Source of the DNA: Penicillus capitatus
Taxonomy: Eukaryota > Plantae > Chlorophyta
NCBI GenBank assembly: GCA_965649825.1
Contig: OZ287703.1
Coordinates: forward strand, 925,722 to 989,721
Direction of reading: 5' to 3'
Length of the DNA stretch: 64,000 nt
The position numbers and the translations under genes were made by a program. Under the pieces are notes generated by a model. It searched no databases. It saw only the letters and a list, made by a program, of their open reading frames with translations, and was not told the DNA's origin. This document shows positions 1,299-64,000 of the stretch, in pieces (position 1 is the first letter of the stretch; the number at the start of each line of letters is the position of its first letter).

Positions 1299-1315
1299 TG
1301 GTCCACGAAGATATA
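1299..1315 (+). repeat. Target-site duplication, left copy (TGGTCCACGAAGATATA)
   Basis: Exact 17-bp match to 3217-3233. Confidence 0.9.
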
Positions 1316-3216
1316 TATAAGATTGCGTGCTTTTACAACTCCTTTTTGAGAAGATCAGGAGTGCGTCGAAACATTAAGTGTAGCAAACAATATTCAGGCG
1401 TCCAAACAGAATAGACCGGCCGACATGAATGAAATGGTGGTTCAGGTAGTTTCTCGTGGTGCACTGGGGAACCGAGCGAACGGTCGGATGGGCAGTACCA
1501 TGTAGTCCAGGGTAGCAAACGCGGCCTTGTGGTCTCCAAACAGTTGTTCGTGGAGAGTCTTCGAAACGAAGACTTTCAGGTTCTTACTCGGTGTCCATTC
1601 CGGGAGGGGTTGTCCTGTAGCGTCTCGTTTTCTGCGATTCAATCGATGCGGGGCTGCAAAATGCGATTCTTCGATTTCTGTTACCGGCAACTTCCAGCGG
1701 GATGCGTTCTGTTCAGCGATGGCGGAGATGGCCGCTTCAGGGTCGATGTCCAGGTCGACATTGCTGATGACCACTGGGACCTTGTCTTTGGTGGGCGAGA
1801 GATACGGGTTGTTGACCGTGAACGTTCCAATGTCATCCAATTCCAGATCCCATGAGTCGCCTGCACATTCCAGACATCGGTCGAGCGATCTCTCGAAAGA
1901 CTTGAGCAGTTCGGCTCGGATTTGCACATAGTAACGTCCGCCGTGATCAGATCGGATGTCTTCTACATATTCCTTCAGGTTCTCGATCTTTAGCGTGCGC
2001 TCCAAGCTGATCCCAAGCTGGCGAAACGACGGGTGGTCTCCCTTCATCGTCACTGGGCATAGCTGGAAGCTGCGTTCATCACATCTGATCTGCGCTTTGA
2101 ACTTCTGAGGTTTCTTGCGAATCTCCCTGGCCTGGGCAATTCGTTGCTTTTGTGCGGGGGTCGTTGCGGACTGGTCTGGGACTGAGCTGTAGGCATGGCC
2201 TGACGATCGGCATCCCGGTACGTTCTGGGAGCTTCGCTGCCGGTGCCAGTTTCTGGCACTGCCTGGGCTCTGGTAGCTGGTGCGGGAGACATTGGTTGCG
2301 CGACAAACTGGGTCGACTCCGTGATGCTGAAGTAGAACAGCATGCATGTGTGCACATCGTGCATCTTGGAGAAAGCCTGGGAGAGACTAGTCCTCAGTGA
2401 AGATTCCTCTGGGATGAAAGACGGGACGATCATCTCTATTTGGGAGAGAGACGATCGGAGGTCGTCGGAGAGTGCTCTGAGAAACTGGCTTAGCGGCACC
2501 GAGTGACGCGATCGACAGAGAAGCGCTGTGCTTGTGCCTCTCGCCGGGCGATGTGACTGTCTTGTCGAAGAAGGGTTCTTCCTGCCAAGGGGAGCTGGTT
2601 GACTCATCTAAGGCCTTCTTCTCTGGCTCTGGGCATGTGATGACTCATCCACCTAGACAGTCTTTTCATCCTGCATGTATAAATGACTGATTCTGAACCT
2701 CTCCGGACCTTGCTCTGTAAACATCAAGAAGTCTTCCGCTGTTGTATTTTCTTCGTTCGACCCGACCGGTGACAGTGCCGTCCGCCAGGGGTGGGTCTGG
2801 GGCTTCTGGCGCCAGGAGGAGCTGGTTGCGAGTGTTCTCAAGCCTTCTAGCGAGGTGTAGCTGTGCGTCGTCCCTTTCTTCGTGTGCAGTCAGAAAGGCT
2901 CGGATCTTCTCGCTGATTTGTACGGGGTCCAGGGTAGCAGCGAGCTGAGTAGGGCAGGCTCGTAGTGCGGTATTGACGAGGATGAGCTTATCCTTGCTCA
3001 TGCCCTTGAGTACCTCAGGGGACTGACGCAGGTCGCGTCGATACCGGACCGTGTTTGCGGCCTGAGCCATCGCCGTGCGCACTGGGTCGGGGGCGGTGTC
3101 AGGACCTCTTGACTGAGAGCCAAAAGGCTGCATCGTTCGTTGTCGCGCGTGCGGACACCGTCGTTCAGCAAGGGTTTTGAAACGGCGGGACGAAAGTGTC
3201 GTACGAGAGAATTTTT
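1316..3216 (-). mobile_element. Non-autonomous ORF1-only (half-LINE-like) non-LTR retroelement, about 1.9 kb, with a degenerate ORF1
   Basis: Flanked by an exact 17-bp direct repeat (1299-1315 and 3217-3233). The minus-strand ORF pieces 3133-2666, 2841-2653, 2607-2050 and 2347-1442 match ORF1 of the LINE at 41.4 kb in order (PDTAP; TYRDA vs SYKDA; DERSF vs DERAF; EDIRSDHGGRYYVQIR vs EDIRKDPRGNFYVQIK; PSKNLKVFVSK vs PSQTIKIWLSK). No endonuclease or RT sequence. The last ~50 nt resemble the LINE 3' end. Confidence 0.85.
1442..3133 (-). pseudogene. Disrupted LINE ORF1 (gag-like) of the ORF1-only element
   Basis: Collinear homology to LINE ORF1 spread over three reading frames. Inferred frameshifts near 2800 and 2150; in-frame TAG codons at 2653-2655 and 2608-2610. 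Confidence 0.75.
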
Positions 3217-3233
3217 TGGTCCACGAAGATATA
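3217..3233 (+). repeat. Target-site duplication, right copy (TGGTCCACGAAGATATA)
   Basis: Exact 17-bp match to 1299-1315. Confidence 0.9.
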
Positions 3234-5436: not shown

Positions 5437-10319
<4,883 letters not shown>

Positions 10320-12270
10320 CTTGCCAATGTAACAAGAACTGCAAACGGTCGGAGCTTAAAAATGCAGTCTGATTTGACGTGTGAGCAGCGACAGCCACAG
10401 GAAAGCGCTCTACGTCAGTAACTACTAATGCACGCGTCATGCCTTGCTGCGCCGCGGAAGGATAGTAGAACCATAACACCGTTTCCTCGAACGATAAACG
10501 CAGCATCCATTTCGTACTTCATAACCTTGAGAGCGCTGCTCTGGCAGACATTGCGATAAGGGACATGTCACATTGGCTTTGGCTCATTGACAACGGAGCG
10601 CATCCACAAGCACTCGAGCAGATCGCATCGATCTCAGGATGCTTTAATGGAATCTCTTTTTGATCGACAAGTGTCTAGAAACCTTAATCTCGATAGATTC
10701 TAAAATGCGGAAGTGGCCTTACTGTTGTCTGCATTGAAACTTCGATTGTGTGGAGTGGTGTGCTCAGGAGCTTTTGTCAACCTATAAGAGACAGCAGTCA
10801 ATAACGTGCTGTTCTAAACAAAGGCAGTGGAATGCTGAAGAAGACCTCATTCGAAGTGTGCTGGGCAACTTGATCCTGGACGATCGTGTATCGTGAAATC
10901 TTCCAATCACTGGTACGTTCTGCAGTTCTCGGAAGACGGGTGCTACAGTATCTGCACAAACATACATATCCTTGGTCATCATCTAAGTCCAATCCATCGC
11001 TTGGCGACAAAGGCATCCTTCGTCTGCAGCAGAGAAAGTTGCCGTGATTGTAAGGTCAGTCGGTAGTGCTGAACACAAGAGGCGATGGACTGCACGCCCA
11101 TGAAGAGCGCATCTCAAATAGACGCGTCAGTTGACCTTAATCTGTGTTTTGGCAGATCGTGTGTGTCCATCGTTGCTGGGCATCGTGAGACGACTACCCG
11201 ATTTTCGAAAACAGATGGACTTAAAGCTAGGCCGCTTCCGTGGAAACAGTGGATAGTGACCTCCAGTATTTCACTCACGAGATCACGTCCCAGATGACCT
11301 TCAGGCGGCATATGCCGATCATTAAATGCTCATCCGTTGTTAACGTGTAGCAGACCTTCGTCAGTCATGTTTGTCAGAACCTCCCACATTCGATGTGAGC
11401 AAATTCATGTGATCCCTGATATACGACTTCAGTAAAGGCCTTAGAGACACGAAACTGCGTACAGAAGGGCGCGGACAACGGAACGCTCCATCGACAGCGT
11501 GCCGTCCGTTAAAGGACACTAGACTAGGAGAGATCAGCCTCCATGGAGAGCACAGGTGATCTCACGAGCTTCAAACGCTATCTCAGAAACTTGAAGATTG
11601 TTTCCAATCACGATCGACGGGAACGTCATATTCCGACGACCGTAATAGATTGATCACTCTCGTCCTGCGTATTGGCCCAATTAAAGTGAGACGGGAGATA
11701 ATGATGAACTGTATCGCCGCCTCACATAAGAAAAACCGTGCGTGAAGGCGACAGGTGGCAGCTGTAGTTGTCGCTGCAACTGCTGCTATATGCCAATGAC
11801 TGCTGTTGCGTTTCTGCGATGTGACGTCTCGGCGGCGCAGTCACATCTTTCTTTCCAGCCAGCGGTCTCCGCAAAACATGTCGAGAGGACGGCAATATGC
11901 AGAACCGACAGAGTCCATGACGCGACGGTTGCACCTGTCGGAAGCCACGTCTTTTCAAGTCTTGTCAAGCCTTCGGAAGGAACAGGCTGGCAGGTCAGTC
12001 GAAGTCCTAATGTCTCGCCAAAGAACGCGTCAGATACCACGCGGGCGATTATCTTAAATGGACTAACCGCTGCATGATGATCTTCACCAGCGAGGCGTCA
12101 AACAACCGCGCTCTTCATCGTCGAACGTACACCGCGTGTCGAACGTTGTCGTTCAGGGGACGGCCTCTTCCTCCTTTCGACTGTTGCACGTTTCTCTTTG
12201 TCACTCGTCTTTCCAAACGAGAATAAATCGTCAGAGCCAGAGTAGACCTCAGAGTGCTTCCTTCCAACGG

Positions 12271-13017
12271 ATGGCCGGGATGGCAACGTTGCCTTGGAAG
12301 ACGACTCTCTCTGGCATACTGCAAGACTACTCGACCCTTCTTGTGACTACCCTATGTCCTGCTCTGGCATACCGTTCTGCCTCCAAGAATCTTGAGGACT
12401 CTCCAGCTGGATGCCTCGAATCGACGGCGGGAGGATACTGTCCGTGTTATGGGTGGACTCTACGGACGCAGCTGCGAAAGAAATATAACCTGGAGGGTTC
12501 AATCTTGAAAGATATTGCGGCGCATCTCTGCTGCCACTGTGTGGCCCTTGCGAGGGTCTGGAGAGAATCCGAGATGCGGATCGAGACGCAGAACCGACCT
12601 GCGTCTCCGGCATCTCGCACGACATCGATGCAGCCGCCCGTTCAACCCATCGTCCCACCGGTGCAGCGGTTCGTTGCCCATACCAGCGGACAGGTCGGAT
12701 TTCCACCGCCTATAGGTGAGCACTTGAAGGAGAGAGAATCGACCTGCGTCCTACGCTGTTTAGGCATCCCAGTCGAGACATCATGTATCCCTAACCTTCA
12801 ACGCATCGCAGAGCCATCCACCAGATCGGTGATACCTCCAACCCTGATCATACAGCAGGCAGAGAACAGTTCGCGGATGACTGCAGACTCGCAGCCCGCG
12901 CCGTCATTTAATTCGATCTCTTTACCTGCGGCTAACCAGACAGACACTTCGGGTTCCGTGAGATTATTATCTCCGGAACGGCAGCCATTCAATACGGATC
13001 GAGATACACAAGAGTGA
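12271..13017 (+). CDS. PLAC8-family (plant cadmium resistance/CNR-like) Cys-rich protein, copy a
   Basis: LPWKTTL...LCPALAY...YCPCYGWTLRTQLRKKYNLEGSILKDIAAHLCCHCVALAR matches the PLAC8 pattern (R..LR.KY...G....D...H.CC..CAL). P/S/Q-rich tail. Exact start uncertain. Confidence 0.85.
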   Translation: MAGMATLPWKTTLSGILQDYSTLLVTTLCPALAYRSASKNLEDSPAGCLESTAGGYCPCYGWTLRTQLRKKYNLEGSILKDIAAHLCCHCVALARVWRESEMRIETQNRPASPASRTTSMQPPVQPIVPPVQRFVAHTSGQVGFPPPIGEHLKERESTCVLRCLGIPVETSCIPNLQRIAEPSTRSVIPPTLIIQQAENSSRMTADSQPAPSFNSISLPAANQTDTSGSVRLLSPERQPFNTDRDTQE

Positions 13018-14450: not shown

Positions 14451-19344
<4,894 letters not shown>

Positions 19345-20068
19345 CGTGTCTGGCTGTGAGTCCTAAGCGACGCAAGGACAGTCCGCCCCGTTTTCCGAGA
19401 TGCCCAGATCGTATGCTGTGCTGCAGCAAGACGCGAATCGATAAAAATGGAATCAGTTTGATGAATTGATCGAGCAGCTGATGGCAACCACGTCTGTAAT
19501 CTTCCGTTGCGAAACGTCAGAGATTTGAGCCGCCTACTCTCGAACAAAACGAATGCACCTGGGTCAGCTACTAGAGTGCGTTGTATGAGAGTCGGCGACT
19601 CTTTCAGAAAGGAGTTTATTTTATCTCGGCTGTTTTCGTAGAACATGGATGCACTCTATTTCCGCCTTCGAGGAATTTAGAACACGTGTCCGTGACAAGA
19701 CATCCAAATGCCAATCGAGCTCGTTAGTTACCATTTGCGCGTCAGTAACTACTTGAACACAGTAAGTATCGCACCTTGTACGCAGAGAAGTAGTGCCAGG
19801 CACGTGGCAGCAATCATGGTTTAAATAGAGTCATAGTCGCGCTTCTAGTCCATAACAATCAATGCATCTGTTATAACGTCGAAAAATTGCTTGCCTATCT
19901 CTTATGTGATGTGACGTGCTCCCTGCTAATGGCCCTTAAAGTAGAGTCACCCTTTTGCGATGACAAACACCGTCTTCACGAGTCGGAATCAACGACATCC
20001 TCTCCCTTGAAGCTCCGCAACATCCCAAAGACCACCCTCCAGACTTCCCCCGGTCAGTCATCTCTCCC

Positions 20069-20675: not shown

Positions 20676-21414
20676 ATCGATACCACCACAGATCCATATC
20701 TGCAGGACTAGTCCATCTTCCCTTGGTTTGTTTTCAGGGGATCATACATGGTTATGTTTTCAATACGTCTGTCGAAACATATATATCGCGGGGACATCCG
20801 CAGAGTTGAAATCAGAAAAGCAGAGATTTTGCACAGGGAATGGTCGCCCTGCTATCACGAGACTTCATTTTCTTTCCTATGTTTCGAACACTGACAGAGA
20901 AGGGGCATCCATTTTCCAGTCCATTCTCAAATTCTATAACGATTGTATACATATCTCCTTGCTAGGATGAAAAGACCCTTCGTCTATGTTACATTTGTAT
21001 ACCATCTAGGCATTTACAATGTACTTGAACAGAACATGGATTCACAATCTTCCTTCGGACGTCACATCTGTCTCGTATCACCTTCGAGCGGTTTCGCACT
21101 TTGAAAGCTAGCATTGCCTGTGCGGCAGTGACAAGGGTCGGCGTTTCTGGTCAATGCTTTGTGCATTTGTCTGGACACTTCGATGTGACAAGCTGTCGGA
21201 CACGCCGGTCCCGACCGCCTGGCGAACTGGGTGAGCGACTTCTCCCGGCAGAAAGTGTCAAGCACGAGGAGATGCGTCAGTGCGCACCATTCCGTGCGGA
21301 TGGAGAGACACTGGGTAGTCCATTGCTTCTGAGGTGCTATATTTGACAACGGTCTCAACGGTCATGTCAAAAAGCATCGCCGAGACGGGACGTTGAAAGT
21401 GACGGATTTGTAGA

Positions 21415-26299
<4,885 letters not shown>

Positions 26300-27564: not shown

Positions 27565-29426
27565 TTACTCTTCGGATCTCACACATTCCTCGATGGGAGA
27601 GAGAAGCTCGGCACTCCTTTGCTGCCGTTCTCTCTCGATCATGCGTTGAAAGCGTTTCTCCGGCGGTCTCAGAATTTTGCCCAGGGAGAAATCGTTGTGT
27701 GCGATGCCCGATGCCTCCAAATCCGCAAACCGCTTCCGCACACGATTCTCGAGACTGAAGGAGAGACACGAGGGAAAGGCCACGAGCTCATCGATCTTTC
27801 GACCGAGGGTCTTTGTAAAGTAGGAGACCTTCTGCGTCAGTGTCTCCGATCGTATCGATAGCAGCCACGGAAAACGCAGCAGCAGTCGTCGGCATTCGAG
27901 AATATTCAATCTCAGCTGCGATCGGAGATGCTCCATCCGAATGCGGATTTCGGCTTCGTTGCTCGACAGCAAACGACAGCAGCCGATCAGAAGTCGTCCA
28001 GCTCCTTTGCTGTCCAATCCTGTCAGGCTTTTGAGAAACTCCACTTTCGGCCGGAGATCACGCTCGATCGATTTGTTGAGCAAAGTGGGTCGCCGTATCA
28101 GAAGGCGGAAAAAACGATCGGGGGCGATCCTTAAATCTTCCAGAAAGTAGGAACAGACAGGTCGCATCACATCTGTGCAGGAGATGTCCAGAATCGACGG
28201 CTTCTTTAACAGGAGTCGGGCGGCGTGGGCACGGGACATTCGGACATCTTCTAGACAGAAGGACAGCCATGGCTCCAGCTCATCTTCGACAGATCTGAAC
28301 CGTAGATCCACATCGCGTCGATGCAACTGCTGCAGTTCTGCCTGTTCGAATGACAACTCTGCTTTGAGAAAGGCATCGACGCCTGTGCGTCCTTGAAGCA
28401 GCGGATAGGACCGCACGTCATGCACATCTGTCGTTTTGCCTTTTGGCGTTGATGTGACGTCTGACGTTGATGTGACGACGTCAGGTGATGATGTGACTTT
28501 TGGCGGCGGAACGTCGGCTGATGGGACGTTGAGGAAGGTATTGAGTGGTGGTGTTGAATGCGGACTGCCGGGCACTCGATAGAGTTCTTCGCCGTTGGCA
28601 GCAACGACGACCGTTTCGCGCAAGGTCGTGACGATGCTGCTGATCCCTGTCTGTCCAAACTCAAGCGTCACGTCCATTTCGGTGTAATTGGATGGAGCGA
28701 TCGGTACCTACTTCCCATCACATCACACTTTTAGCAAAAGAGTGAGAGAAGAACCAACTCGCATGGAACGGTTCATGCCCTTCTCCCAAGCAAAGGACAT
28801 GCCACCCACTCCCATCCGCACACACTAACAGCCACCCCACCAGCATCACATGTCCAGCCAACAGGCATCGATCCCATACTTTGTATTCGTAGTTGCCCGG
28901 GGGTAAGCGCGTTTGCGATGTCCATAAATGACCCGGTGCCCACACACACAGCAGTCCACGTTCCTCCTTCCAGTTGCCGAGCTCAGGGCAATTGCCGCAG
29001 ACAATGACATGCTCGCCCAGTTCCACACGATAGGGAATGCAAAAACGCACGGCCACGGTACAGGCAGTTACCACCGGCTGCGACGATTCCACCACCTACG
29101 TCACACTTCTCACACTTTTTGACAAGACACGCACCGTCTCTCACATTGACAGCACCTGGAGATGGAGCCAATCGCGCCTCTTGGGGCAACGTCAGTGACA
29201 GACCGTCTACGACAGTGAAGGCGAATGGAGGGGTGGCTCGGTGCGGAGGGGCCCTACCGCCGAGTGTCCGTTCGATATCGATGAATCCGTTTCCTATGGA
29301 CGCGCTCCGTATGCGCATACGTGTGAGATGTCGTCGACGTCGTGTCCTTCTCCATTTCGCACCGTATCGCCAAGAGCAGCTACGGATCATTCTGGGCGAG
29401 AAGGCCTTCATCGATATCATCGTCAT
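27565..29426 (-). CDS. Predicted fusion: putative transit peptide + CBM20 starch-binding domain + S/T/P linker + mTERF repeats
   Basis: Exons 29145-(29318 to 29426), 28880-29095, 28759-28824 and 27565-28707, joined by phase-0 GT-AG introns of 49, 55 and 51 nt. CBM20: VRFCIPYRVELGEHVIVCGNCPELGNW...W...LPPGNYEYK...WEKGMNR. mTERF: LLIRRPTLLNKSIERDLRPKVEFL, LLLRFPWLLS, LVAFPSCLSFSLENRV. Start codon uncertain. Confidence 0.8.
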
Positions 29427-41358: not shown

Positions 41359-41372
41359 TTCCAGTGCCTTAC
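41359..41372 (+). repeat. LINE target-site duplication, left copy
   Basis: TTCCAGTGCCTTAC, identical to 46869-46882. Confidence 0.92.
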
Positions 41373-41381
41373 AATCTTCTG

Positions 41382-42956
41382 ATGGAACGTTCATCACCAT
41401 CGCGAACGCGCGCAAAGCCGAAGGTCAAGGGCAGAAACAAGCCTCCAGACACCGCTCCGGCGGAACCACAACTTCCGCCTGACTTCCCAAAACGCCTGGC
41501 TTAGCGCGCAGCCCACGAGTCGGGCTTTCGACGGTTTGCCCGAGATAACGAAGCCTTCCTCCCGCTCCTAGACCAGGCCACGCTGAAAGCTGTCACCTCG
41601 GCAGTGCACCAGCCGGACTGGCTGATTTCGAAAGCAGAGCTGCCCTCGCTTGATAGCGAAGTGCTGCTAGGAGCTCTTCAACAGTATCTCCGCAGCTATC
41701 AAGACACTGACTCGAAGTGGGAAGCGGAACAAGACCAGACGTCAGAGGAGGATGAAGAGGACAAAATGAGTGGAATCTCGACGCACACCGCAAAGAGCCC
41801 CCAGGGCCCGACGGCCGCCCAGATGGAGGTCCCTGCCGAGCCCCAGCGCAACACGGCGGCACAGAAAGGAACCCCGTACTACTCGTTTGGCAGCTGGTTA
41901 GGAGAAATACACACAGGCATGAAACTGGCAAGGGAAGCGCTTCAAAGCCAACTACGAATGCTCAACTCCATGGCGGACGGCCTTGAACCCTCGGACGCAG
42001 ACATCAACAGCCTCACTCAGCTCGCCGCGGGAGCTCTAGGCACGATCAACGGGTTGGCAAGTGGCAGCGACCTCATGCTCGACCGCTACAAAGAATGCCG
42101 AGCCACAGCAGTCCCTCAGGCTGCCGCCGAAGCGCACCCAGAATCACACGCCGTAGGGGATCCCCCGCGCAGACGACCCCCTGCACCCCACTCTGGTAAT
42201 CTGCTCTCTTACAAGGACGCCGCCACCGCCGCTTCAACGACATCCCCAACACCCCGGATTGATGACAATCGGTCCGAGATGCTCCGCCGTCGTCGCGAAG
42301 TCTTCGGAGAGCTTAAAAAGGCCAACAGAGCAGATGAACGAGCCTTCCGGCTGCTCCAACCATCTAATCGTCTCCCGATGGCACTCGGCCTGGTAGGCAA
42401 AGCCTTCCTGGAGGGCATCAAATGGAAATCGTCAGAAGACTCCCCAATTGAAGACATCAGAAAGGATCCGCGTGGAAACTTCTACGTGCAAATCAAGCGT
42501 GCACAATTCAGACTCGTCACCAAAAGAGTTCAAGAAAACCGCAACGAAGAACAAAGCATCGATCTGCCATCTCTGGGCCCCACCCTCATTAAGGACCCCC
42601 GAAAATGTGAACGAGCCGGCTTGACACCGGCCGCCCTCACAAGAATTCACCAAGACTGGACCCTCGACCACGCCGCGGAGGAAATCTGGACATCCAACAA
42701 AGACAGATGGCAGCTAGGTCCCAACGCAACCCGCCAAGACCATATCATCCTGGAGCGTCGCCTCGCTCGCAGAGACCCGAACTCAGAAGACCCCTCGGTC
42801 CGAATCCCAAGTCAAACAATCAAGATCTGGCTCTCAAAAGAACTGGCCGCCCGGATCGAACGAGACGGTTGCGCCGTCAGATTCGACTACCAGATTCATG
42901 AGGTCCGGCGCTTCGAGGACACAACAGGTCGCCAACAGGCGACCCGCTCATTATGA
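41382..42956 (+). CDS. LINE ORF1 (gag-like, 524 codons) with one in-frame TAG at codon 41
   Basis: ATG at 41382 is in frame with the 41604 ORF; the only interruption is TAG at 41502-41504. Sequence on both sides of the TAG matches ORF1 of the left element (PDTAP; AA....FRR..R). Confidence 0.8.
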
Positions 42957-45900
42957 GCAGCACATCCTCAGCCGACACAGATCTCAGCCGTGATCACCCG
43001 CAAAGCATCCAGTCGCAGCTCCCCCCTCAATGGACTCATTGGCAGATAAATATGCATGGATCGCAACAAGCCATGGACATCCTTTCAAAGCACATCTCAG
43101 AGGAAGCAGTTGAAATAATCAGCGTCTCCGACCCAGCTTGGGTACTTCGAAGAGGTTGGGCCCCGCCGGGCTATGTCTCAATTCGTCCGCAGATTCAAGA
43201 GGAAGATGACGTTTTAGCGCTCCTCCTCATCAAGGCCAACCTGTCTTTCAAGACCCTCTTCTTGCCTGACGCCCGAGTCGCTGGTGTTGTACTTAAGTCA
43301 AACCGAAAGGACTGGTTCTTCCTTTCAGTATACATTCAACCAAACACCGGCATGGGTTTTGAAACAATTTCCACGCTGCTGCGAAACACACACAACTCGC
43401 AACAAACATGGTTCATCGCCGGAGATTTTAACTCAAGACACCCACGTTGGGGCCCGGAGGACACTCCTGAAACCAACAAGGCAGCAGGCATTCTGGATCT
43501 CTGTGATGACTTTCACCTCGCAATTCTCAACGAGTACCCCTGCCCCCCTACTTTCCGATCGCCAAACGGTCAAAGCTGGATCGATCTGACTCTCTGTTCC
43601 CAAAACTTGGCTGAATCATCGACGTGGACGGTCAGAGAAGATCTCATCTCGCTCTCGGACCATCAGATTGTGGAAACCAAGTTATGGCACTGCAGTCGTC
43701 CCCCCAAAAACGCATCCAGACAGAACTGGAGGAAGGCAGACTGGCCCGCCATCCGTAACTCCGTAAAGGAGGCGCTGGAAGGCTTCCCAGAAGCTACGCA
43801 CTGGAGGACGCTCAACTCCAGCGAGGGCTTCGATAGTCACTCGAAATTGTTCATTGAACTGATCCAGGAGGCCGCCAGACCACACGTGCCCCTCTCAGGA
43901 GCGCGAAAACCTAGGAAGCACTGGTGGAACGATGAGCTAGACCAGCTCTACAGGGTACTCAAAAGAGCCCTCCGCCGCAGAGAGAAACACAGAAGCCGTT
44001 TCGGTTGGACTCCAGACTGCCTTGAAGACGCAGTGTCCGACGCAAAAGCCCACCTCAAACATAACATTCGGAAGAACAAACGCGAAGCCTGGAGGGAATT
44101 CCTATCCAGCAACTCTGGAACCCAGTCTGACATGTGGCAAACAGTCAAGAAAATCACCCAGGCACAAAAGCGCCCAACACTGGACTTTGTGCAGAGCCAA
44201 AACGGCGAAATTCTCCATGACCCAGCAAATATCGCAGCGGCCTTGCAATCAAAGTTCTTCCCGACACCGGAAGACGTCTATCAAGACAACCCATGCACAT
44301 CAGCTACGCCCCTGCCCCGAATGCATATGGGTAATATTCCGCAGGTCTCCGAGATAGAAGCTAGGAAAGCCTTTGGCTGCGGCCGCCCCCTAGCGGCCCC
44401 TGGACCGGACGGCCTCCCCAAGGCAATCTTCCAGAGATGCATGCACAGTCTCAGTCCTCAACTCAAGGAACTCGCCTCAGCCAGCCTCCAGTTCGGCATA
44501 TGCCCCCATCACTGGAAGCTCTCTCAAGTCATAGCCCTACACAAGGGGAACAACCCAGGAAATGAGGTCGGTAAACTACGGCCCATCAGTCTCTTAAACA
44601 CGCTGGCAAAAGGCATGGAGACTCTCGTGGCTGCACGTCTGAAGTACTGGTCAGAGAAAAACATGATTCTAGACCCCTCTCAGTTCGGTTTCAGACCCGG
44701 AAAAAGCACAACAGATGCCCTGCTCACCGCTTCGGATTGGATCGCAGAACAAATGCAAAATGGTGACATTGTGTACGGTGTTGCCCTGGATCTTGTCGCG
44801 GCTTTTGACTCCATAAGCCGGGCTTATCTGGTTCAGACGCTCATACGACTAGAAGCCCCCCCGTATCTGATCCACTGGTGCAGCTCCTTTCTACAGGACC
44901 GCAAAGCAGAACTGCAGATCTCCGACTCTATCTTCACTTCGTCGACACTCGCCGGCGTCCCACAGGGATCTCCCTTGAGCCCGCTGCTATTCATCCTAGG
45001 GATCAATGCGGCCCTGCAGATCCCAAAGGACACCGGGGTGCATCTACAGGCGTATGCAGACGACATCCTCCTCCTATGCAGCGCGAACTCGGAAGAATTG
45101 GCTCGTCACAAGGCTCAGAAGACCTTGGACCTACTGGTGGAATGGAGCCGCAAAGCTGGAATGCAGTTCTCAGAAAAGAAATGCCTGGCAATAAGATTCC
45201 AAGCAAAGGTCAGACGAGCAGAGATGCTCCCGTTGTATCTGGGTTCGGCCAAGCTTAGAGCAGTCAAAAGCTGCAGATACTTAGGGATGATCCTGGATGA
45301 AAGACTCACTTGGAAACCGCACCTGCAATTTGCCCAACAGCGCGCCCGGGAACGTCTGGCAATCATCAGAAGGTTCTCAGCCAAGACCTGGGGCTTCTCA
45401 CCGGAAGCCATGTGGCAACTCACAACCAAGGCCCTGGAACCTGCACTGTACTACGGGGCGGAAGCTCTAAGCCGCATACAAAACTCCCCCCAACATCTGT
45501 CAATCCTCAACCGAGTCGTTCGCCAAGCTGGCCTCCTGATCTCGGGCTGCCTGAGAACGACCTCCTACGAAGCAGTGTTCGCCCTGGCTGGCCTCCTCCC
45601 GGCGCAAATGGAAATCAGACGCAGAATTCTCTACTGGCACCTCAAAAAGGACAGAGGGAAAATACCCCCGTTGGTCTCCGAACTGCACTCAGACAACCGC
45701 AAAGATCCTGGCCCACTCCGCCGCAGACTGACTGCCAGACAATGGCACCGGAACCTCGCAATCAAAGAGCAGCTGGAACTTCCACCGATGAAGCTGTGCA
45801 GTTTTTCCCCAGAGCTGGCGGGCTTCCTGGAAGCAAATGTAGATGAAGATCATCGTCCAGAATGGATACTTGCAGTGGCAGAGGCAGATCTGAACCTCAC

Positions 45901-46753
45901 AGACGGTACAAAAACGGCCATTGTCTGGCAGCTTACAGGGAGGCAGAAGATCGCAGGGAGAGGGGTTTTGGTTGCGCCACATCAATCAATAAAGGCGGAG
46001 GTGTTGGCAAGCATCCGAGAAGGTCTATACTCCCTAAGTGATCTCCTTCATGAAGCAAGCGGCTCACAGTCCCTCGGTATCATCGCACGGAGAAGCATAT
46101 ATCAACAAGAGCTTACATCTTCGTTCAACGTATGTAAGGACATGCACCTTATCCAACAGTGGTGGATCAAATGGACAATGGCTGGAAACCAAGTGAAATG
46201 GTTCACACAAAGCTGGTCCCCAGGACGAAGCCCTTACCAAGCAGCTAAACTCTCAGCAGAACACATTCTGATGCAAGCACGAAGGCTACCCCCTTCAGCG
46301 AAATACACAGCTCTCGGCTGGTGCAAAAGACACATCAGCTTCACCCTAAACAACTGGACACGAGAACAACTGGACAATGCTGATAAGGGAAGAGCAATCC
46401 TCGACCTAAACCCGCCGATGGGGAAAGGACATTTCCCCACAAGGAAACTCCAACGCACCGACGCCTCACGGGTCAATCAATTCCTGGCAAACCATTTCCC
46501 GTCCAAGGCATATCTCAGCCGCTTTCACTGTACAGAAGACGTGGAGACGTGCGTATGTGGTCAAGAAGTAGAAGATAGAGATCACCTGCTTTACTCCTGC
46601 CCCCGCTTTCACCGACGAAGGATGATTTACGGACAGGAATCTCAGGCTGAAGCGGATCAATCACACCCCCTTTGGAATGCCCCCCACGCTCTGGCGGCTT
46701 TCCTAGAAGAAATCGCTCAGGATTGGCAGCAGCAAGGAAGGACATGGCACTGA
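42953..46753 (+). CDS. LINE ORF2: APE endonuclease + reverse transcriptase + degenerate RNase H-like region + C-terminal CCHC
   Basis: APE: QINMHGS, GDFNSRH, SWIDLT, SDH. RT: PGPDG, LRPISLL, QFGFRPG, DLVAAFDS, GVPQGSPLSPLLF, YADD, YLG. Terminal CVCGQEVEDRDHLLYSC. Open for 1266 aa. Confidence 0.97.
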   Translation: MSSTSSADTDLSRDHPQSIQSQLPPQWTHWQINMHGSQQAMDILSKHISEEAVEIISVSDPAWVLRRGWAPPGYVSIRPQIQEEDDVLALLLIKANLSFKTLFLPDARVAGVVLKSNRKDWFFLSVYIQPNTGMGFETISTLLRNTHNSQQTWFIAGDFNSRHPRWGPEDTPETNKAAGILDLCDDFHLAILNEYPCPPTFRSPNGQSWIDLTLCSQNLAESSTWTVREDLISLSDHQIVETKLWHCSRPPKNASRQNWRKADWPAIRNSVKEALEGFPEATHWRTLNSSEGFDSHSKLFIELIQEAARPHVPLSGARKPRKHWWNDELDQLYRVLKRALRRREKHRSRFGWTPDCLEDAVSDAKAHLKHNIRKNKREAWREFLSSNSGTQSDMWQTVKKITQAQKRPTLDFVQSQNGEILHDPANIAAALQSKFFPTPEDVYQDNPCTSATPLPRMHMGNIPQVSEIEARKAFGCGRPLAAPGPDGLPKAIFQRCMHSLSPQLKELASASLQFGICPHHWKLSQVIALHKGNNPGNEVGKLRPISLLNTLAKGMETLVAARLKYWSEKNMILDPSQFGFRPGKSTTDALLTASDWIAEQMQNGDIVYGVALDLVAAFDSISRAYLVQTLIRLEAPPYLIHWCSSFLQDRKAELQISDSIFTSSTLAGVPQGSPLSPLLFILGINAALQIPKDTGVHLQAYADDILLLCSANSEELARHKAQKTLDLLVEWSRKAGMQFSEKKCLAIRFQAKVRRAEMLPLYLGSAKLRAVKSCRYLGMILDERLTWKPHLQFAQQRARERLAIIRRFSAKTWGFSPEAMWQLTTKALEPALYYGAEALSRIQNSPQHLSILNRVVRQAGLLISGCLRTTSYEAVFALAGLLPAQMEIRRRILYWHLKKDRGKIPPLVSELHSDNRKDPGPLRRRLTARQWHRNLAIKEQLELPPMKLCSFSPELAGFLEANVDEDHRPEWILAVAEADLNLTDGTKTAIVWQLTGRQKIAGRGVLVAPHQSIKAEVLASIREGLYSLSDLLHEASGSQSLGIIARRSIYQQELTSSFNVCKDMHLIQQWWIKWTMAGNQVKWFTQSWSPGRSPYQAAKLSAEHILMQARRLPPSAKYTALGWCKRHISFTLNNWTREQLDNADKGRAILDLNPPMGKGHFPTRKLQRTDASRVNQFLANHFPSKAYLSRFHCTEDVETCVCGQEVEDRDHLLYSCPRFHRRRMIYGQESQAEADQSHPLWNAPHALAAFLEEIAQDWQQQGRTWH

Positions 46754-46868
46754 GATGGTCCCCGGCACGGGGCGACTGTACCTCTGAACATTAGACTCAG
46801 CCCTCTCCTCTGATGTTTAACTTGAAAAGGGGATGTAAGAAGCGCCAATTTTATTTATTTATTATATA

Positions 46869-46882
46869 TTCCAGTGCCTTAC
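46869..46882 (+). repeat. LINE target-site duplication, right copy
   Basis: TTCCAGTGCCTTAC, directly after the AT-rich tail. Confidence 0.92.
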
Positions 46883-58618: not shown

Positions 58619-60081
58619 AGTCGCGGAATGGGTACGGATCTGTCGGAAACTCTGAAACAGAAATTTACAAAAGACAAAAAACGTACTTAGCAACAATCAT
58701 ATGCACTGAATCGAGGTGACACGTTCATTTAAGCCAAATCAAATAACAAACATACGACACGATCACAATTGAGAACTGTCTCTCGGCGTCGCGATTCTGT
58801 TTTTTAGTATTTCAGACAACCGAACCGATGAGTCGCACTTCACGCACAGAGAGAAATGATCTGCGACAGATCGATTACGTCATGTCGTATCAGCCGAACA
58901 AACAGTGTTAAATCGAATACGTACCTTCGATATACGATCGGTCGTCGCCTGCGCAATGTGTCGTACAAATGACATCGGCAGACTGCCCTCCGAAACCACG
59001 TGAGAGGTAACGGTCACATCAAAGGATGCGACAACCAGCACGCACTGATATCTGTTCACGTCACTCTTCCACACCATGTGCTACTCATGTGTCGAAGGAA
59101 TGACAATTCTAAGCCGCTTCCATTCACTGAGATTATTTCTTATGTCCAACCTAGAACAACATCTCGGCCATCCCACACGCACCTCTTGCGCTTGCTTTGG
59201 CATCGAAGACAAACATGTGCTGTGCTTGTGTGGATCGTTTTTTGAAAACAGAAAGCATCTGCTCTTTGAACGCCTTACTCTGGACAGAGCTCGCCGAAAG
59301 CTACGACAGCAGCAACAGTGCTCGACCATTTGAAAACCCAGGATTTTGTGATGTGTCTCGGTGATTTGTGGTGGGAAAAGACAGACGTTGAGGTACAGCA
59401 GAAAGCGAGCCTGGATCACTTTGATTCTGTCTGTTTCGTTAACTTCATTGGACAAACAGAACGCTGGCTTGTCCTTACATCCCCCGGTATGTCATCTAGC
59501 CCAAAGAAAGGTGATCGAGCCAAGGTTTAGTGAGGTCAACTTCTTATGAGACAAAACACTTATCCGTCGATAGGAAGGTGATGTCATCTAAAGGTCGTGG
59601 TTAACAATTTCAAAATGTGAGTCCAAATGGGAATGATCGATTCGACTGTAAGATTCTCATTCTCGACTTGCATTTGGATGTTTTGTTTCAGACACATTCT
59701 AAATTCTTCGTAGGCGAAAATAAAGCACATCCATGTTCTAAGCCCTAAATGCCACTGGCGAAGGGCTTTAAGGAATCATTCACACACATCCATGTTATAG
59801 AGTAACTAAGAAGGCGATATCAGCTCCATCTTTTCGAAAGCATTGTTAATTCTTATTACCTGACGCAGGTGCATTCGTTACTGTTCGATTGCAAGAGGCC
59901 CAAATGTTTGACGCTTTCTTGGCAGAAGACTGCACACGCGACAGTCGTCAGATGTGTTCGATTAACTCATCAAACGGATTCCACGTTTATCGATTCGCTT
60001 TTTGCTACTGCATAGTCACAGCATATAATTTTGTGTAGTTAAGAAGACAAGCAGCCTGCTCTTGTCGCGCAGCCTGACACG

Positions 60082-64000
<3,919 letters not shown>

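What the first reader, a model, noticed from the sequence alone, without database searches (positions are those of the whole stretch)
1299..3233. TSD-flanked ORF1-only half-LINE related to the autonomous LINE 40 kb away
Seen: a 1.9-kb insert bounded by an exact 17-bp TSD holds a short 5' leader, an ORF1 homologous end to end with ORF1 of the LINE at 41373, and a ~125-nt 3' end, with no ORF2 sequence. The TSD fits directly around this arrangement, so the unit appears to have been inserted as is. ORF1 divergence is large, so it is a separate lineage and not a recent deletion of that LINE copy. Established: ORF1-only HAL1 elements are described as L1 derivatives. Inference: an independent HAL1-like family mobilised in trans by a non-L1 APE LINE in an alga.
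Basis: partly seen in the sequence, partly recalled or inferred. Interest (0 to 1): 0.7.

Follow-up and report, generated by a model that had tools for sequence, protein, structure and literature searches.

The report
Decayed copy of ORF1-only retrotransposon
The 1.9-kb insert is a dead copy of a mobile-element family that carries only the RNA-binding "ORF1" gene of a LINE and apparently borrows the copying enzyme of two different full LINEs whose 3' ends it imitates; this kind of parasite is known from mammals, flies and slime moulds, and is seen here in what looks like a green alga.

Summary
An exact 17-bp target-site duplication (1299-1315, 3217-3233) brackets a 1,901-bp minus-strand unit: an 83-nt leader, an ORF1 and a 126-nt 3' end, with no ORF2. 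Two corrections apply. The ORF1 here is broken by 3 stops, 2 frameshifts and about 240 extra bp. It is homologous to the ORF1 of the LINE at 41373 only over the C-terminal ~250 aa (24-29% identity).

The family reading is supported. Twenty-six related proteins exist, and intact copies are about 472 aa. All 10 copies whose DNA I read, from two related assemblies, lack ORF2 and have their own 12-17 bp duplications. dN/dS between copies is 0.16-0.40.

The 3' ends come in two types, and each matches the 3' end of a different LINE lineage. A 6-bp hairpin is kept through compensatory changes. The window copy carries the tail of another LINE lineage (L008 type), not that of the LINE 40 kb away. Sister copies carry the window LINE's tail, and that LINE is young (a second copy is 99.8% identical).

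The modelled ORF1 protein has a helical N-terminal half and tandem RRM-like domains. This is a new member of a known kind (HAL1, HeT-A, TRE5-A.2). Mobilisation in trans is inferred, not shown.

The parts
1299..1315 (.). Target-site duplication, copy next to the element's 3' end (TGGTCCACGAAGATATA on the + strand)
   Evidence: Exact 17-bp repeat. Only 2 matches in the window even with 2 mismatches allowed; 0 expected.
1316..1441 (-). 3' untranslated end of the half-element (126 nt). It finishes in a short TTATA tail (1320-1316) rather than poly(A).
   Evidence: Runs from the stop codon to the duplication. It aligns with the 3' ends of the other copies.
1323..1380 (-). LINE-like 3' module, 'type A'
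   Evidence: 60-nt local alignment, 83% identical, to the 3' end of the L008 LINE from the same assembly: score 66 against a shuffled maximum of 21. Against the window's own LINE the score is 28 against 25.
1338..1362 (-). Conserved 3' hairpin (ACTCCT, 13-nt loop, AGGAGT), followed by TGTAAAAGC (1337-1329)
   Evidence: Predicted in 11 of the 12 3' ends folded. On 11 aligned 3' ends the 6 pairs are formed in 98.5% of cells and 4 of 6 pairs show changes on both sides. Slid controls reach at most 62% with 0-1 such pairs.
1442..3133 (-). Broken ORF1. aa 1-131 lie at 3133-2741 (frame a), aa ~120-244 at 2535-2164 (shifted frame), aa 227-473 at 2194-1445 (frame a), stop at 1444-1442. There are three in-frame stops.
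   Evidence: Translations and blastx against the 26 family proteins. The closest relatives are 84% identical over the C-terminal half.
2549..2789 (-). About 240 bp with no counterpart in intact copies; origin unexplained
   Evidence: Alignment with L001, L004 and L005. No other match in the DNA held. Bounded by an imperfect direct repeat at 2584-2601 and 2811-2828.
3134..3216 (-). 5' leader (83 nt). After 11 variable nt comes CGTACGACAC, which is conserved at the 5' end of every copy.
   Evidence: Not similar to LINE 5' UTRs: alignment scores equal the shuffle means.
3217..3233 (.). Target-site duplication, copy next to the element's 5' end
41373..46868 (+). Full-length LINE (ORF1 41604-42956, ORF2 42953-46753), flanked by TTCCAGTGCCTTAC at 41359-41372 and 46869-46882. 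It ends in (TTTA)n/(TA)n.
   Evidence: A second copy, 99.8% identical over 5,470 nt with different flanks, is in L010.
46805..46841 (+). 'Type B' 3' hairpin module of the window LINE. Half-element copies L005, L011, L012 and L003 carry it.
   Evidence: L005 against the window LINE 3' end: 92 nt, 87% identical, score 124 against a shuffled maximum of 21. L003: 51 nt, 86%. Motif hits in L005, L010, L011, L012 and L003.

Best explanation
Window 1316-3216 (minus strand) is a decayed insertion of a non-autonomous non-LTR retrotransposon family that encodes only an ORF1 protein. Proposed life cycle: the element is transcribed from its own conserved 5' leader. Intact copies are translated into a ~472-aa ORF1 protein with a helical N-terminal half and two RRM-like RNA-binding domains. 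The RNA presents a 3' hairpin followed by TGTAARA, copied from a LINE 3' end. The endonuclease/reverse transcriptase (ORF2 protein) of that LINE then nicks a target and copies the RNA in by target-primed reverse transcription, which leaves a 12-17 bp target-site duplication and a short A-rich or TA/TTA-rich tail. The family uses two interchangeable 3' modules, each matching a different LINE lineage in the same genome. The window copy has the type A module (L008-type LINE). Sister copies, one apparently on the same contig, have the type B module of the window's LINE at 41373. Shown: the architecture, the copy-specific duplications, the absence of ORF2, the shared tails, hairpin covariation, purifying selection on ORF1, and the tandem-RRM fold (a model). 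Inferred: use of LINE ORF2 protein in trans, recognition through the hairpin, the need for the element's own ORF1 protein, and promoter activity of the leader.
For: An exact 17-bp duplication lies directly around leader-ORF1-3'end. The family has 26 relatives, with intact members of 470-476 aa. All 10 copies read (window, L001-L007, L011, L012) have their own duplication of 12-17 bp, and none has ORF2 following its ORF1; the only ORF2 match in those loci is a separate truncated LINE upstream in L007. The sequence right after the stop codon looks alike in the two divergent subfamilies on reading the aligned 3' UTRs, so the ORF1-only layout is probably ancestral. dN/dS is 0.16 (dS 0.40), 0.21 (dS 1.25) and 0.40 between intact copies, and 0.10-0.27 in the C-terminal half. 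The 3' ends match LINE 3' ends far above shuffles, and they match type by type. A 6-bp hairpin is kept through compensatory changes. In about 210 kb of DNA held, the tail motifs occur only at LINE and half-element 3' ends. LINE copies have similar duplications of 11-14 bp. The type B LINE is young, with two copies 99.8% identical. The AF2 model (48 sequences, pLDDT 81) matches tandem-RRM proteins at E about 1e-4, probability 1.0. Distant relatives of the ORF1 sit in LINE contexts: two are fused to Exo_endo_phos_2 and two to three carry CCHC knuckles.
Against: No experiment or polymorphism data show mobility or dependence on a LINE. The partner assignment rests on 40-90 nt of 3' sequence. The copies were found through predicted proteins, so intact copies are over-represented, and I could read only 10 of at least 26. 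The genome was not searched exhaustively, so a full-length LINE with this ORF1 could still exist. The 5' leader is unrelated to the LINE 5' UTRs I had, and the N-terminal half of ORF1 is unrelated to LINE ORF1, so the origin is not a simple internal deletion of any LINE seen. The window copy itself is dead and ends in TTATA rather than poly(A). The data are metagenome-style assemblies of an unidentified host.
Confidence: 0.8

Rival explanations
1. The insert is a full LINE insertion that lost ORF2 by deletion after it landed. This is the refutation scenario the first reader named.
For: The ORF1 C-terminal half is homologous to LINE ORF1. The window copy is visibly decayed and carries an internal rearrangement of about 240 bp.
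Against: Ten independent loci have the same ORF1-3'UTR arrangement, each with its own duplication directly around it. No ORF2 remnant exists in any of them. ORF1 is at most 30% identical to every LINE ORF1 found. Purifying selection has acted across deep divergence between ORF1-only copies.
Confidence: 0.03
2. The copies are processed retrocopies of a single host gene (a domesticated ORF1/gag-like gene, as L1TD1 is in mammals), scattered passively by LINEs. On this reading there is no self-propagating element.
For: Retrocopies also carry duplications and A-rich tails. The protein is a plausible cellular RNA-binding protein with tandem RRMs. Only tens of copies are known.
Against: At least 8 dispersed copies keep intact ORFs, with dN/dS 0.16-0.40 at dS 0.24-1.25; dead-on-arrival retrocopies would approach 1. 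All copies begin at the same conserved leader motif. Their 3' ends are LINE-specific hairpin modules of two exchangeable types, not just poly(A). No intron-containing parent gene was seen among the hits.
Confidence: 0.07
3. The window copy was mobilised by the LINE 40 kb away (41373-46868), as the finding's title implies.
For: That LINE family is young, with a second copy 99.8% identical. Half-element copies L005, L011, L012 and L003 carry its 3' module. Both tail types share the hairpin-TGTAARA design.
Against: The window copy's 3' end matches this LINE only marginally (31 nt, score 28 against a shuffled maximum of 25). It matches the L008-type LINE clearly (60 nt, 83%, score 66 against 21).
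Confidence: 0.15

Closest known systems
HAL1 ('half-L1') elements of mammals
   Same: Both are non-autonomous LINE derivatives that encode only ORF1p, are multi-copy, and are presumed to be mobilised by the LINE's ORF2 protein. HAL1 arose several times independently (PMC5753468; Bao & Jurka 2010 as cited).
   Different: HAL1 derives from L1 and carries an L1-type ORF1 (coiled coil, RRM and C-terminal domain; Pfam Transposase_22). Here Pfam finds no Transposase_22, the model looks like tandem RRMs with L1 ORF1p only at E 0.06, and the N-terminal half and 5' leader are unrelated to the partner LINEs. The element also carries LINE-specific 3' hairpin modules of two types, rather than relying on poly(A) alone (my recollection of L1 biology for the latter).
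HeT-A of Drosophila telomeres
   Same: It encodes only a Gag/ORF1-type protein and lacks pol. It depends on the reverse transcriptase of another element (TART or TAHRE) (PMC5537684). It is a long-lived ORF1-only lineage kept under selection.
   Different: HeT-A inserts only at chromosome ends and serves telomere maintenance. The copies here are interstitial, have ordinary target-site duplications, and sit at unrelated loci.
TRE5-A.2 of Dictyostelium discoideum
   Same: It is a non-autonomous variant that lacks ORF2 and is mobilised in trans by the ORF2 protein of TRE5-A.1; this has been shown experimentally (PMC5633606).
   Different: TRE5-A.2 is described there as a variant of its autonomous partner TRE5-A. 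Here ORF1 is at most 30% identical to the ORF1 of any LINE found, and only about 40-90 nt of the 3' end are shared.
SINE-LINE pairs of the 'stringent' type
   Same: The non-autonomous element carries the 3' tail of its partner LINE. For stringent-type LINEs, recognition involves a 3' UTR stem-loop (abstracts of PMC5786205; PMC3747384; PMC5135761).
   Different: SINEs are short, non-coding, and have small-RNA-derived heads. This element is 1.6-1.9 kb and keeps a selected protein-coding gene.

Membership tests
Non-autonomous non-LTR retrotransposon (general) | No reverse transcriptase or endonuclease of its own | tested here: met
   tblastn with LINE ORF2 finds nothing in the insert, nor downstream of ORF1 in any of the 10 copies; the one hit in L007 is a separate truncated LINE upstream. 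Pfam finds no RT or endonuclease domain in the insert's ORFs.
Non-autonomous non-LTR retrotransposon (general) | Dispersed copies, each flanked by its own target-site duplication | tested here: met
   10 of 10 copies have unique duplications of 12-17 bp.
Non-autonomous non-LTR retrotransposon (general) | 3' end shared with an autonomous LINE in the same genome | tested here: met
   Type A against the L008 LINE: 54-60 nt, 81-85% identical. Type B against the window LINE: 92 nt, 87%. Both are far above shuffles. Hairpin covariation.
Non-autonomous non-LTR retrotransposon (general) | Mobilised in trans by the LINE's ORF2 protein | not testable with these tools
   This needs a retrotransposition assay or insertion-polymorphism data.
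HAL1 (half-L1) | Encodes ORF1p only | tested here: met
   Intact relatives have a single 470-476 aa ORF between the leader and the 3' end. The window copy is a broken version.
HAL1 (half-L1) | Derived from L1: L1-type ORF1 (coiled coil, RRM, C-terminal domain; Transposase_22) and an L1 partner | tested here: not met
   No Transposase_22 hit. Foldseek's best matches are tandem-RRM proteins (E about 1e-4), with L1 ORF1p only at E 0.06. ORF2 has Pfam Exo_endo_phos_2. The LINE clade was not determined by phylogeny, so the partner half of this feature is inconclusive.
Type I LINE ORF1p (Khazina & Weichenrieder classes, as summarised in PMC4120745) | At least one RRM domain | tested here: met
   AF2 model with pLDDT above 90 over aa ~235-460. 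Two beta-alpha-beta domains match HuR, nucleolin and hnRNP A1 tandem RRMs with probability 1.0. This rests on a model, not a solved structure.
Type I LINE ORF1p (Khazina & Weichenrieder classes, as summarised in PMC4120745) | CCHC zinc knuckle immediately downstream of the RRM | tested here: not met
   There is no CCHC in the half-element or window LINE ORF1. Only 2-3 distant relatives carry zf-CCHC.
APE-type LINE (the element at 41373-46868) | ORF2 with an AP-endonuclease domain and a reverse transcriptase, plus a target-site duplication | tested here: met
   Exo_endo_phos_2 at 4.7e-22 and RVT_1 at 1.5e-37. 14-bp duplication.

The most novel reading that the evidence does not exclude
This may be an old, self-standing 'ORF1-only' retrotransposon lineage. 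It would be shared by two related green-alga-like hosts and would survive by swapping its 3' hairpin module between two divergent LINE lineages (ORF2 only about 37% identical), so that it can parasitise whichever is active. It keeps its own tandem-RRM ORF1 protein under selection and has replaced that protein's N-terminal half with an unrelated helical module. That would combine HAL1/HeT-A-like coding capacity with SINE-like stringent tail mimicry and partner switching. I found no description of this combination in the papers searched.
Probability: 0.5. Interest if true: 0.55.

Novelty: new member of a known kind. Interest (0 to 1): 0.45.

Why it matters
ORF1-only LINE parasites are known from mammals (HAL1), Drosophila telomeres (HeT-A) and Dictyostelium (TRE5-A.2). 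A family in a photosynthetic protist or green alga widens that distribution. This family keeps ORF1 under selection, and its members carry either of two LINE-specific 3' modules. That makes it a natural experiment on two open questions: why a parasite of a LINE would need its own ORF1 protein, and how 3'-end recognition by LINE reverse transcriptases constrains partner choice. For annotation, the ~472-aa proteins with no Pfam match in these assemblies should be labelled as transposon ORF1, not as host genes.

Tried and rejected
1. End-to-end ORF1 homology with the LINE. tblastn with loose settings and hhalign of family profiles align only the C-terminal ~250 aa. Rejected.

2. A LINE-derived 5' leader. 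Local alignments of eight half-element leaders against two LINE 5' UTRs score at the shuffle mean. Rejected.

3. First structure model, from 13 sequences (pLDDT 58). It gave no significant fold match, only a weak hint of L1 ORF1p. It was superseded by the 48-sequence model, which points to tandem RRMs instead.

4. Looking for a full LINE with this ORF1. I used contig-length cross-referencing (P0013 and P0031 both lie on the 776,749-bp contig). The L008 LINE's ORF1 turned out to be the LINE type, 67% identical to the window LINE ORF1 and 30% to P0001. Among 88 library representatives, the only ORF1-ORF2 fusions are at most 30% identical to P0001.

5. The inverted ORF1 in L009 as a second ORF1-only family. 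It continues into the start of ORF2, so it is a truncated LINE. Rejected.

6. The ~240-bp extra segment as a known repeat. There is no other copy in the DNA held, and an internal duplication is only marginally supported. Left unexplained.

7. Host identification. The uS13 search against PDB was uninformative. The ABC-domain search gave only 'green algae are the best named relatives' at 48-50% identity.

8. Target-site motif. 6 of 10 sites have YC|AW at the inferred nick (the LINE_win and LINE_L008 rows of that printout were mis-registered and were re-read). This is too few to claim.
Full report
**1. What is at 1299-3233**

TGGTCCACGAAGATATA occurs exactly twice in the window, at 1299-1315 and 3217-3233. 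Shuffles give zero matches even when 2 mismatches are allowed. The 1,901 bp in between are richer in G+C than the flanks and read on the minus strand.

After the upstream duplication come 11 variable nt and then CGTACGACAC. The leader is 83 nt in all. It is followed by an ATG at 3133 and a frame that runs to a stop at 1444-1442. The 3' end is 126 nt and finishes ...TGTAAAAGCACGCAATC-TTATA directly against the second duplication. Nothing in or near the insert resembles ORF2.

- The frame is broken. It has three in-frame stops, two frameshifts (aa 1-131 at 3133-2741, aa ~120-244 at 2535-2164 in another frame, aa 227-473 at 2194-1445) and about 240 extra bp at 2549-2789.
- Similarity to the ORF1 of the LINE at 41373 covers only the C-terminal part. 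tblastn gives 24% identity over LINE aa ~165-437. Profile-profile comparison gives probability 98.7% for aa 219-467 against aa 197-442 and nothing for the N-terminal halves.

**2. The LINE 40 kb away**

The LINE spans 41373-46868 and is flanked by TTCCAGTGCCTTAC (41359-41372 and 46869-46882). Its ORF1 is 450 aa with no Pfam match. Its ORF2 is 1266 aa with Exo_endo_phos_2 and RVT_1. It ends in (TTTA)n/(TA)n. A second copy, 99.8% identical over 5,470 nt and with different flanks, lies on another contig of the same assembly (L010). The family is therefore young.

**3. It is a family**

The 301-aa ORF found 26 relatives, all from ENA assemblies. Seven are intact proteins of 470-476 aa, 76-84% identical in the shared part. 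A sister type of 478-504 aa is 59-62% identical. A profile search of 1.84 billion representatives found only 88 hits, none of which carries a name in its source.

I fetched the DNA around nine relatives (L001-L007, L011, L012), which come from two assemblies.

With the window copy this makes 10 copies. Every one has the same unit of leader, ORF1 and a ~125-nt 3' end. Every one has its own duplication of 12-17 bp directly around that unit. None has ORF2 sequence following its ORF1 within 6-8 kb; the only ORF2 match is a separate truncated LINE upstream in L007.

Reading the 3'-UTR sequences side by side, the stretch just after the stop codon is alike in both subfamilies. The ORF1-only layout therefore probably predates their split.

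Between intact copies, dN/dS is 0.16 (dS 0.40), 0.21 (dS 1.25) and 0.40 (dS 0.24), and 0.10-0.27 in the C-terminal half. Coding capacity was thus maintained while the ORF1-only lineage diversified.

No LINE I could examine has an ORF1 more than 30% identical to it.

**4. The 3' ends point to the partners**

The half-element copies carry one of two 3' modules:
- Type A (...ACTCCTGATCTTCYCAAAAAGGAGTTGTAAAAGC...) is in the window copy, L001, L004, L002, L006 and L007. All but the window copy end in an A run; the window copy ends in TTATA.
- Type B (...CCTCTGATGTTTAACTTGAAAAGGGGATGTAAGAA...) is in L005, L011, L012 and L003. It ends in a TTA/TA-rich tail.

Type B is the 3' end of the window LINE. 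L005 matches it over 92 nt at 87% identity (score 124, shuffled maximum 21).

Type A is the 3' end of another LINE lineage. That lineage is seen as L008 in the window's assembly and as L009 and a truncated copy in L007 in the other assembly. Its ORF2 is only 36-37% identical to the window LINE's ORF2.

The window copy matches L008 over 60 nt at 83% identity (score 66 against 21). It matches the window LINE only marginally (score 28 against 25).

All tails share one design, a 6-bp hairpin followed by TGTAARA. On 11 aligned ends, 98.5% of pair cells are formed and 4 of 6 pairs change on both sides. Slid controls reach at most 62% with 0-1 such pairs. The sequences are few and related, so this supports the hairpin but does not prove it.

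In about 210 kb of DNA held, the motifs occur only at LINE and half-element 3' ends. Copies with different tails share the first part of the 3' UTR and then diverge. The modules have therefore been exchanged, in both assemblies.

**5. The protein**

A 48-sequence AF2 model of the intact protein P0001 has pLDDT 81, and above 90 over aa ~235-460. It shows a helical N-terminal half, a disordered linker, a basic helix and two beta-alpha-beta domains.

Foldseek matches tandem-RRM proteins (HuR, nucleolin, hnRNP A1, Sxl, U2AF65) at E about 1e-4 and probability 1.0. L1 ORF1p appears only at E 0.06.

A few distant relatives carry CCHC knuckles or are fused to an endonuclease domain. This fits the RRM-plus-knuckle 'type I' LINE ORF1 class summarised in PMC4120745. 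The half-element and window LINE ORF1 proteins themselves lack the knuckle.

**6. Mechanism**

The best-supported reading is a non-autonomous, ORF1-encoding LINE parasite. It would be transcribed from its own leader, bound by its own RNA-binding protein, and copied into new sites by the ORF2 protein of whichever LINE recognises its 3' hairpin.

Shown:
- the structure of the unit;
- copy-specific duplications of the same size class as those of the LINEs (11-14 bp);
- the shared tails;
- selection on ORF1.

Inferred:
- the trans-acting ORF2 protein;
- recognition through the hairpin, by analogy with stringent-type LINE/SINE pairs (abstracts);
- the requirement for the element's own ORF1 protein;
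- promoter activity of the leader.

The window copy is a fossil. Its perfect 17-bp duplications together with 3 stops and 2 frameshifts fit a few per cent of decay after insertion (my estimate). I cannot exclude that it was already defective when it was copied.

**7. Comparison with known systems, and novelty**

HAL1 encodes only ORF1p, derives from L1 and arose repeatedly in mammals. HeT-A lacks pol and depends on another element's reverse transcriptase. TRE5-A.2 lacks ORF2 and is mobilised in trans by TRE5-A.1. This family works like them, so the kind is known.

It is not a HAL1 member, because its ORF1 is not of the L1 type and its origin is not a simple deletion of its partners.

Its particular features are:
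- two interchangeable LINE-specific 3' modules;
- a deep ORF1-only history across two related hosts;
- a replaced N-terminal module in ORF1.

**8. Host**

The host looks like a green alga. A PsbQ gene lies in a related locus. The window holds mTERF and ABC-transporter genes and a related locus holds PPR genes. The best named relatives of an ABC domain are Volvox, Helicosporidium and Edaphochlamys at 48-50% identity. The host is not identified.

**9. Verdict**

It is of moderate interest and is a new member of a known kind.

Noticed in passing
window 41373-46868; L010 1435-6904: The window LINE has a second copy, 99.8% identical over 5,470 nt and with different flanks, so the family is young. 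Its ORF1 frame has no ATG where the related L009 LINE ORF1 starts; the first ATG is at 41766, 54 codons into the conserved region. Either the start codon was lost or a non-ATG start is used.
   Followed up: partly
L008 5066-9909; L009 4496-9705; window 41604-46753: The LINE modules are discordant. The ORF1s of the L008 and L009 LINEs are 60-67% identical to the window LINE ORF1, but their ORF2s are only 36-37% identical. This suggests ORF1 exchange between LINE lineages, the reticulate ORF1 evolution described in PMC4120745.
   Followed up: partly
window 5446-9283, 14500-19573, 21409-26275, 59854-63994: Four diverged copies (70-87% identical, both orientations) of an ABC-transporter gene segment (ABC_membrane, ABC_tran) make up a local paralogue cluster. 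An mTERF gene (27568-28677, minus) and a PLAC8 gene (12136-13014) lie between them.
   Followed up: partly
window 2549-2789: About 240 bp inside the half-element copy have no counterpart in other copies or elsewhere in the DNA held. The segment is bounded by an imperfect direct repeat (2584-2601 and 2811-2828). Its origin is unexplained: internal duplication, filler DNA or a subfamily-specific segment.
   Followed up: partly
L009 2482-4420 (minus strand): A partial LINE copy lies head to head against the 5' end of the full L009 LINE. It holds ORF1 and the first ~90 aa of ORF2. It looks like an inverted or truncated duplication.
   Followed up: no
L007 4838-7059 and 7462-9188: A 5'-truncated type A LINE ends about 400 bp upstream of a half-element that has its own duplication. 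These are two separate insertions close together.
   Followed up: partly
L008 11447-15909; L010 1-1364; L011 683-5289; L012 1-2988; L007 871-4348: Genes of Ty3/gypsy-like LTR retrotransposons (gag-aspartic protease, RVT_1, rve) lie next to several of the LINE and half-element copies. These elements appear to sit in transposon-rich patches.
   Followed up: no
5' junctions of all 10 half-element copies (e.g. window 3206-3216; L012 5909-5926): Between the upstream duplication and the conserved CGTACGACAC there are 7-18 variable nucleotides, often resembling AATTCTC. They could reflect variable transcription starts or untemplated additions during integration.
   Followed up: no
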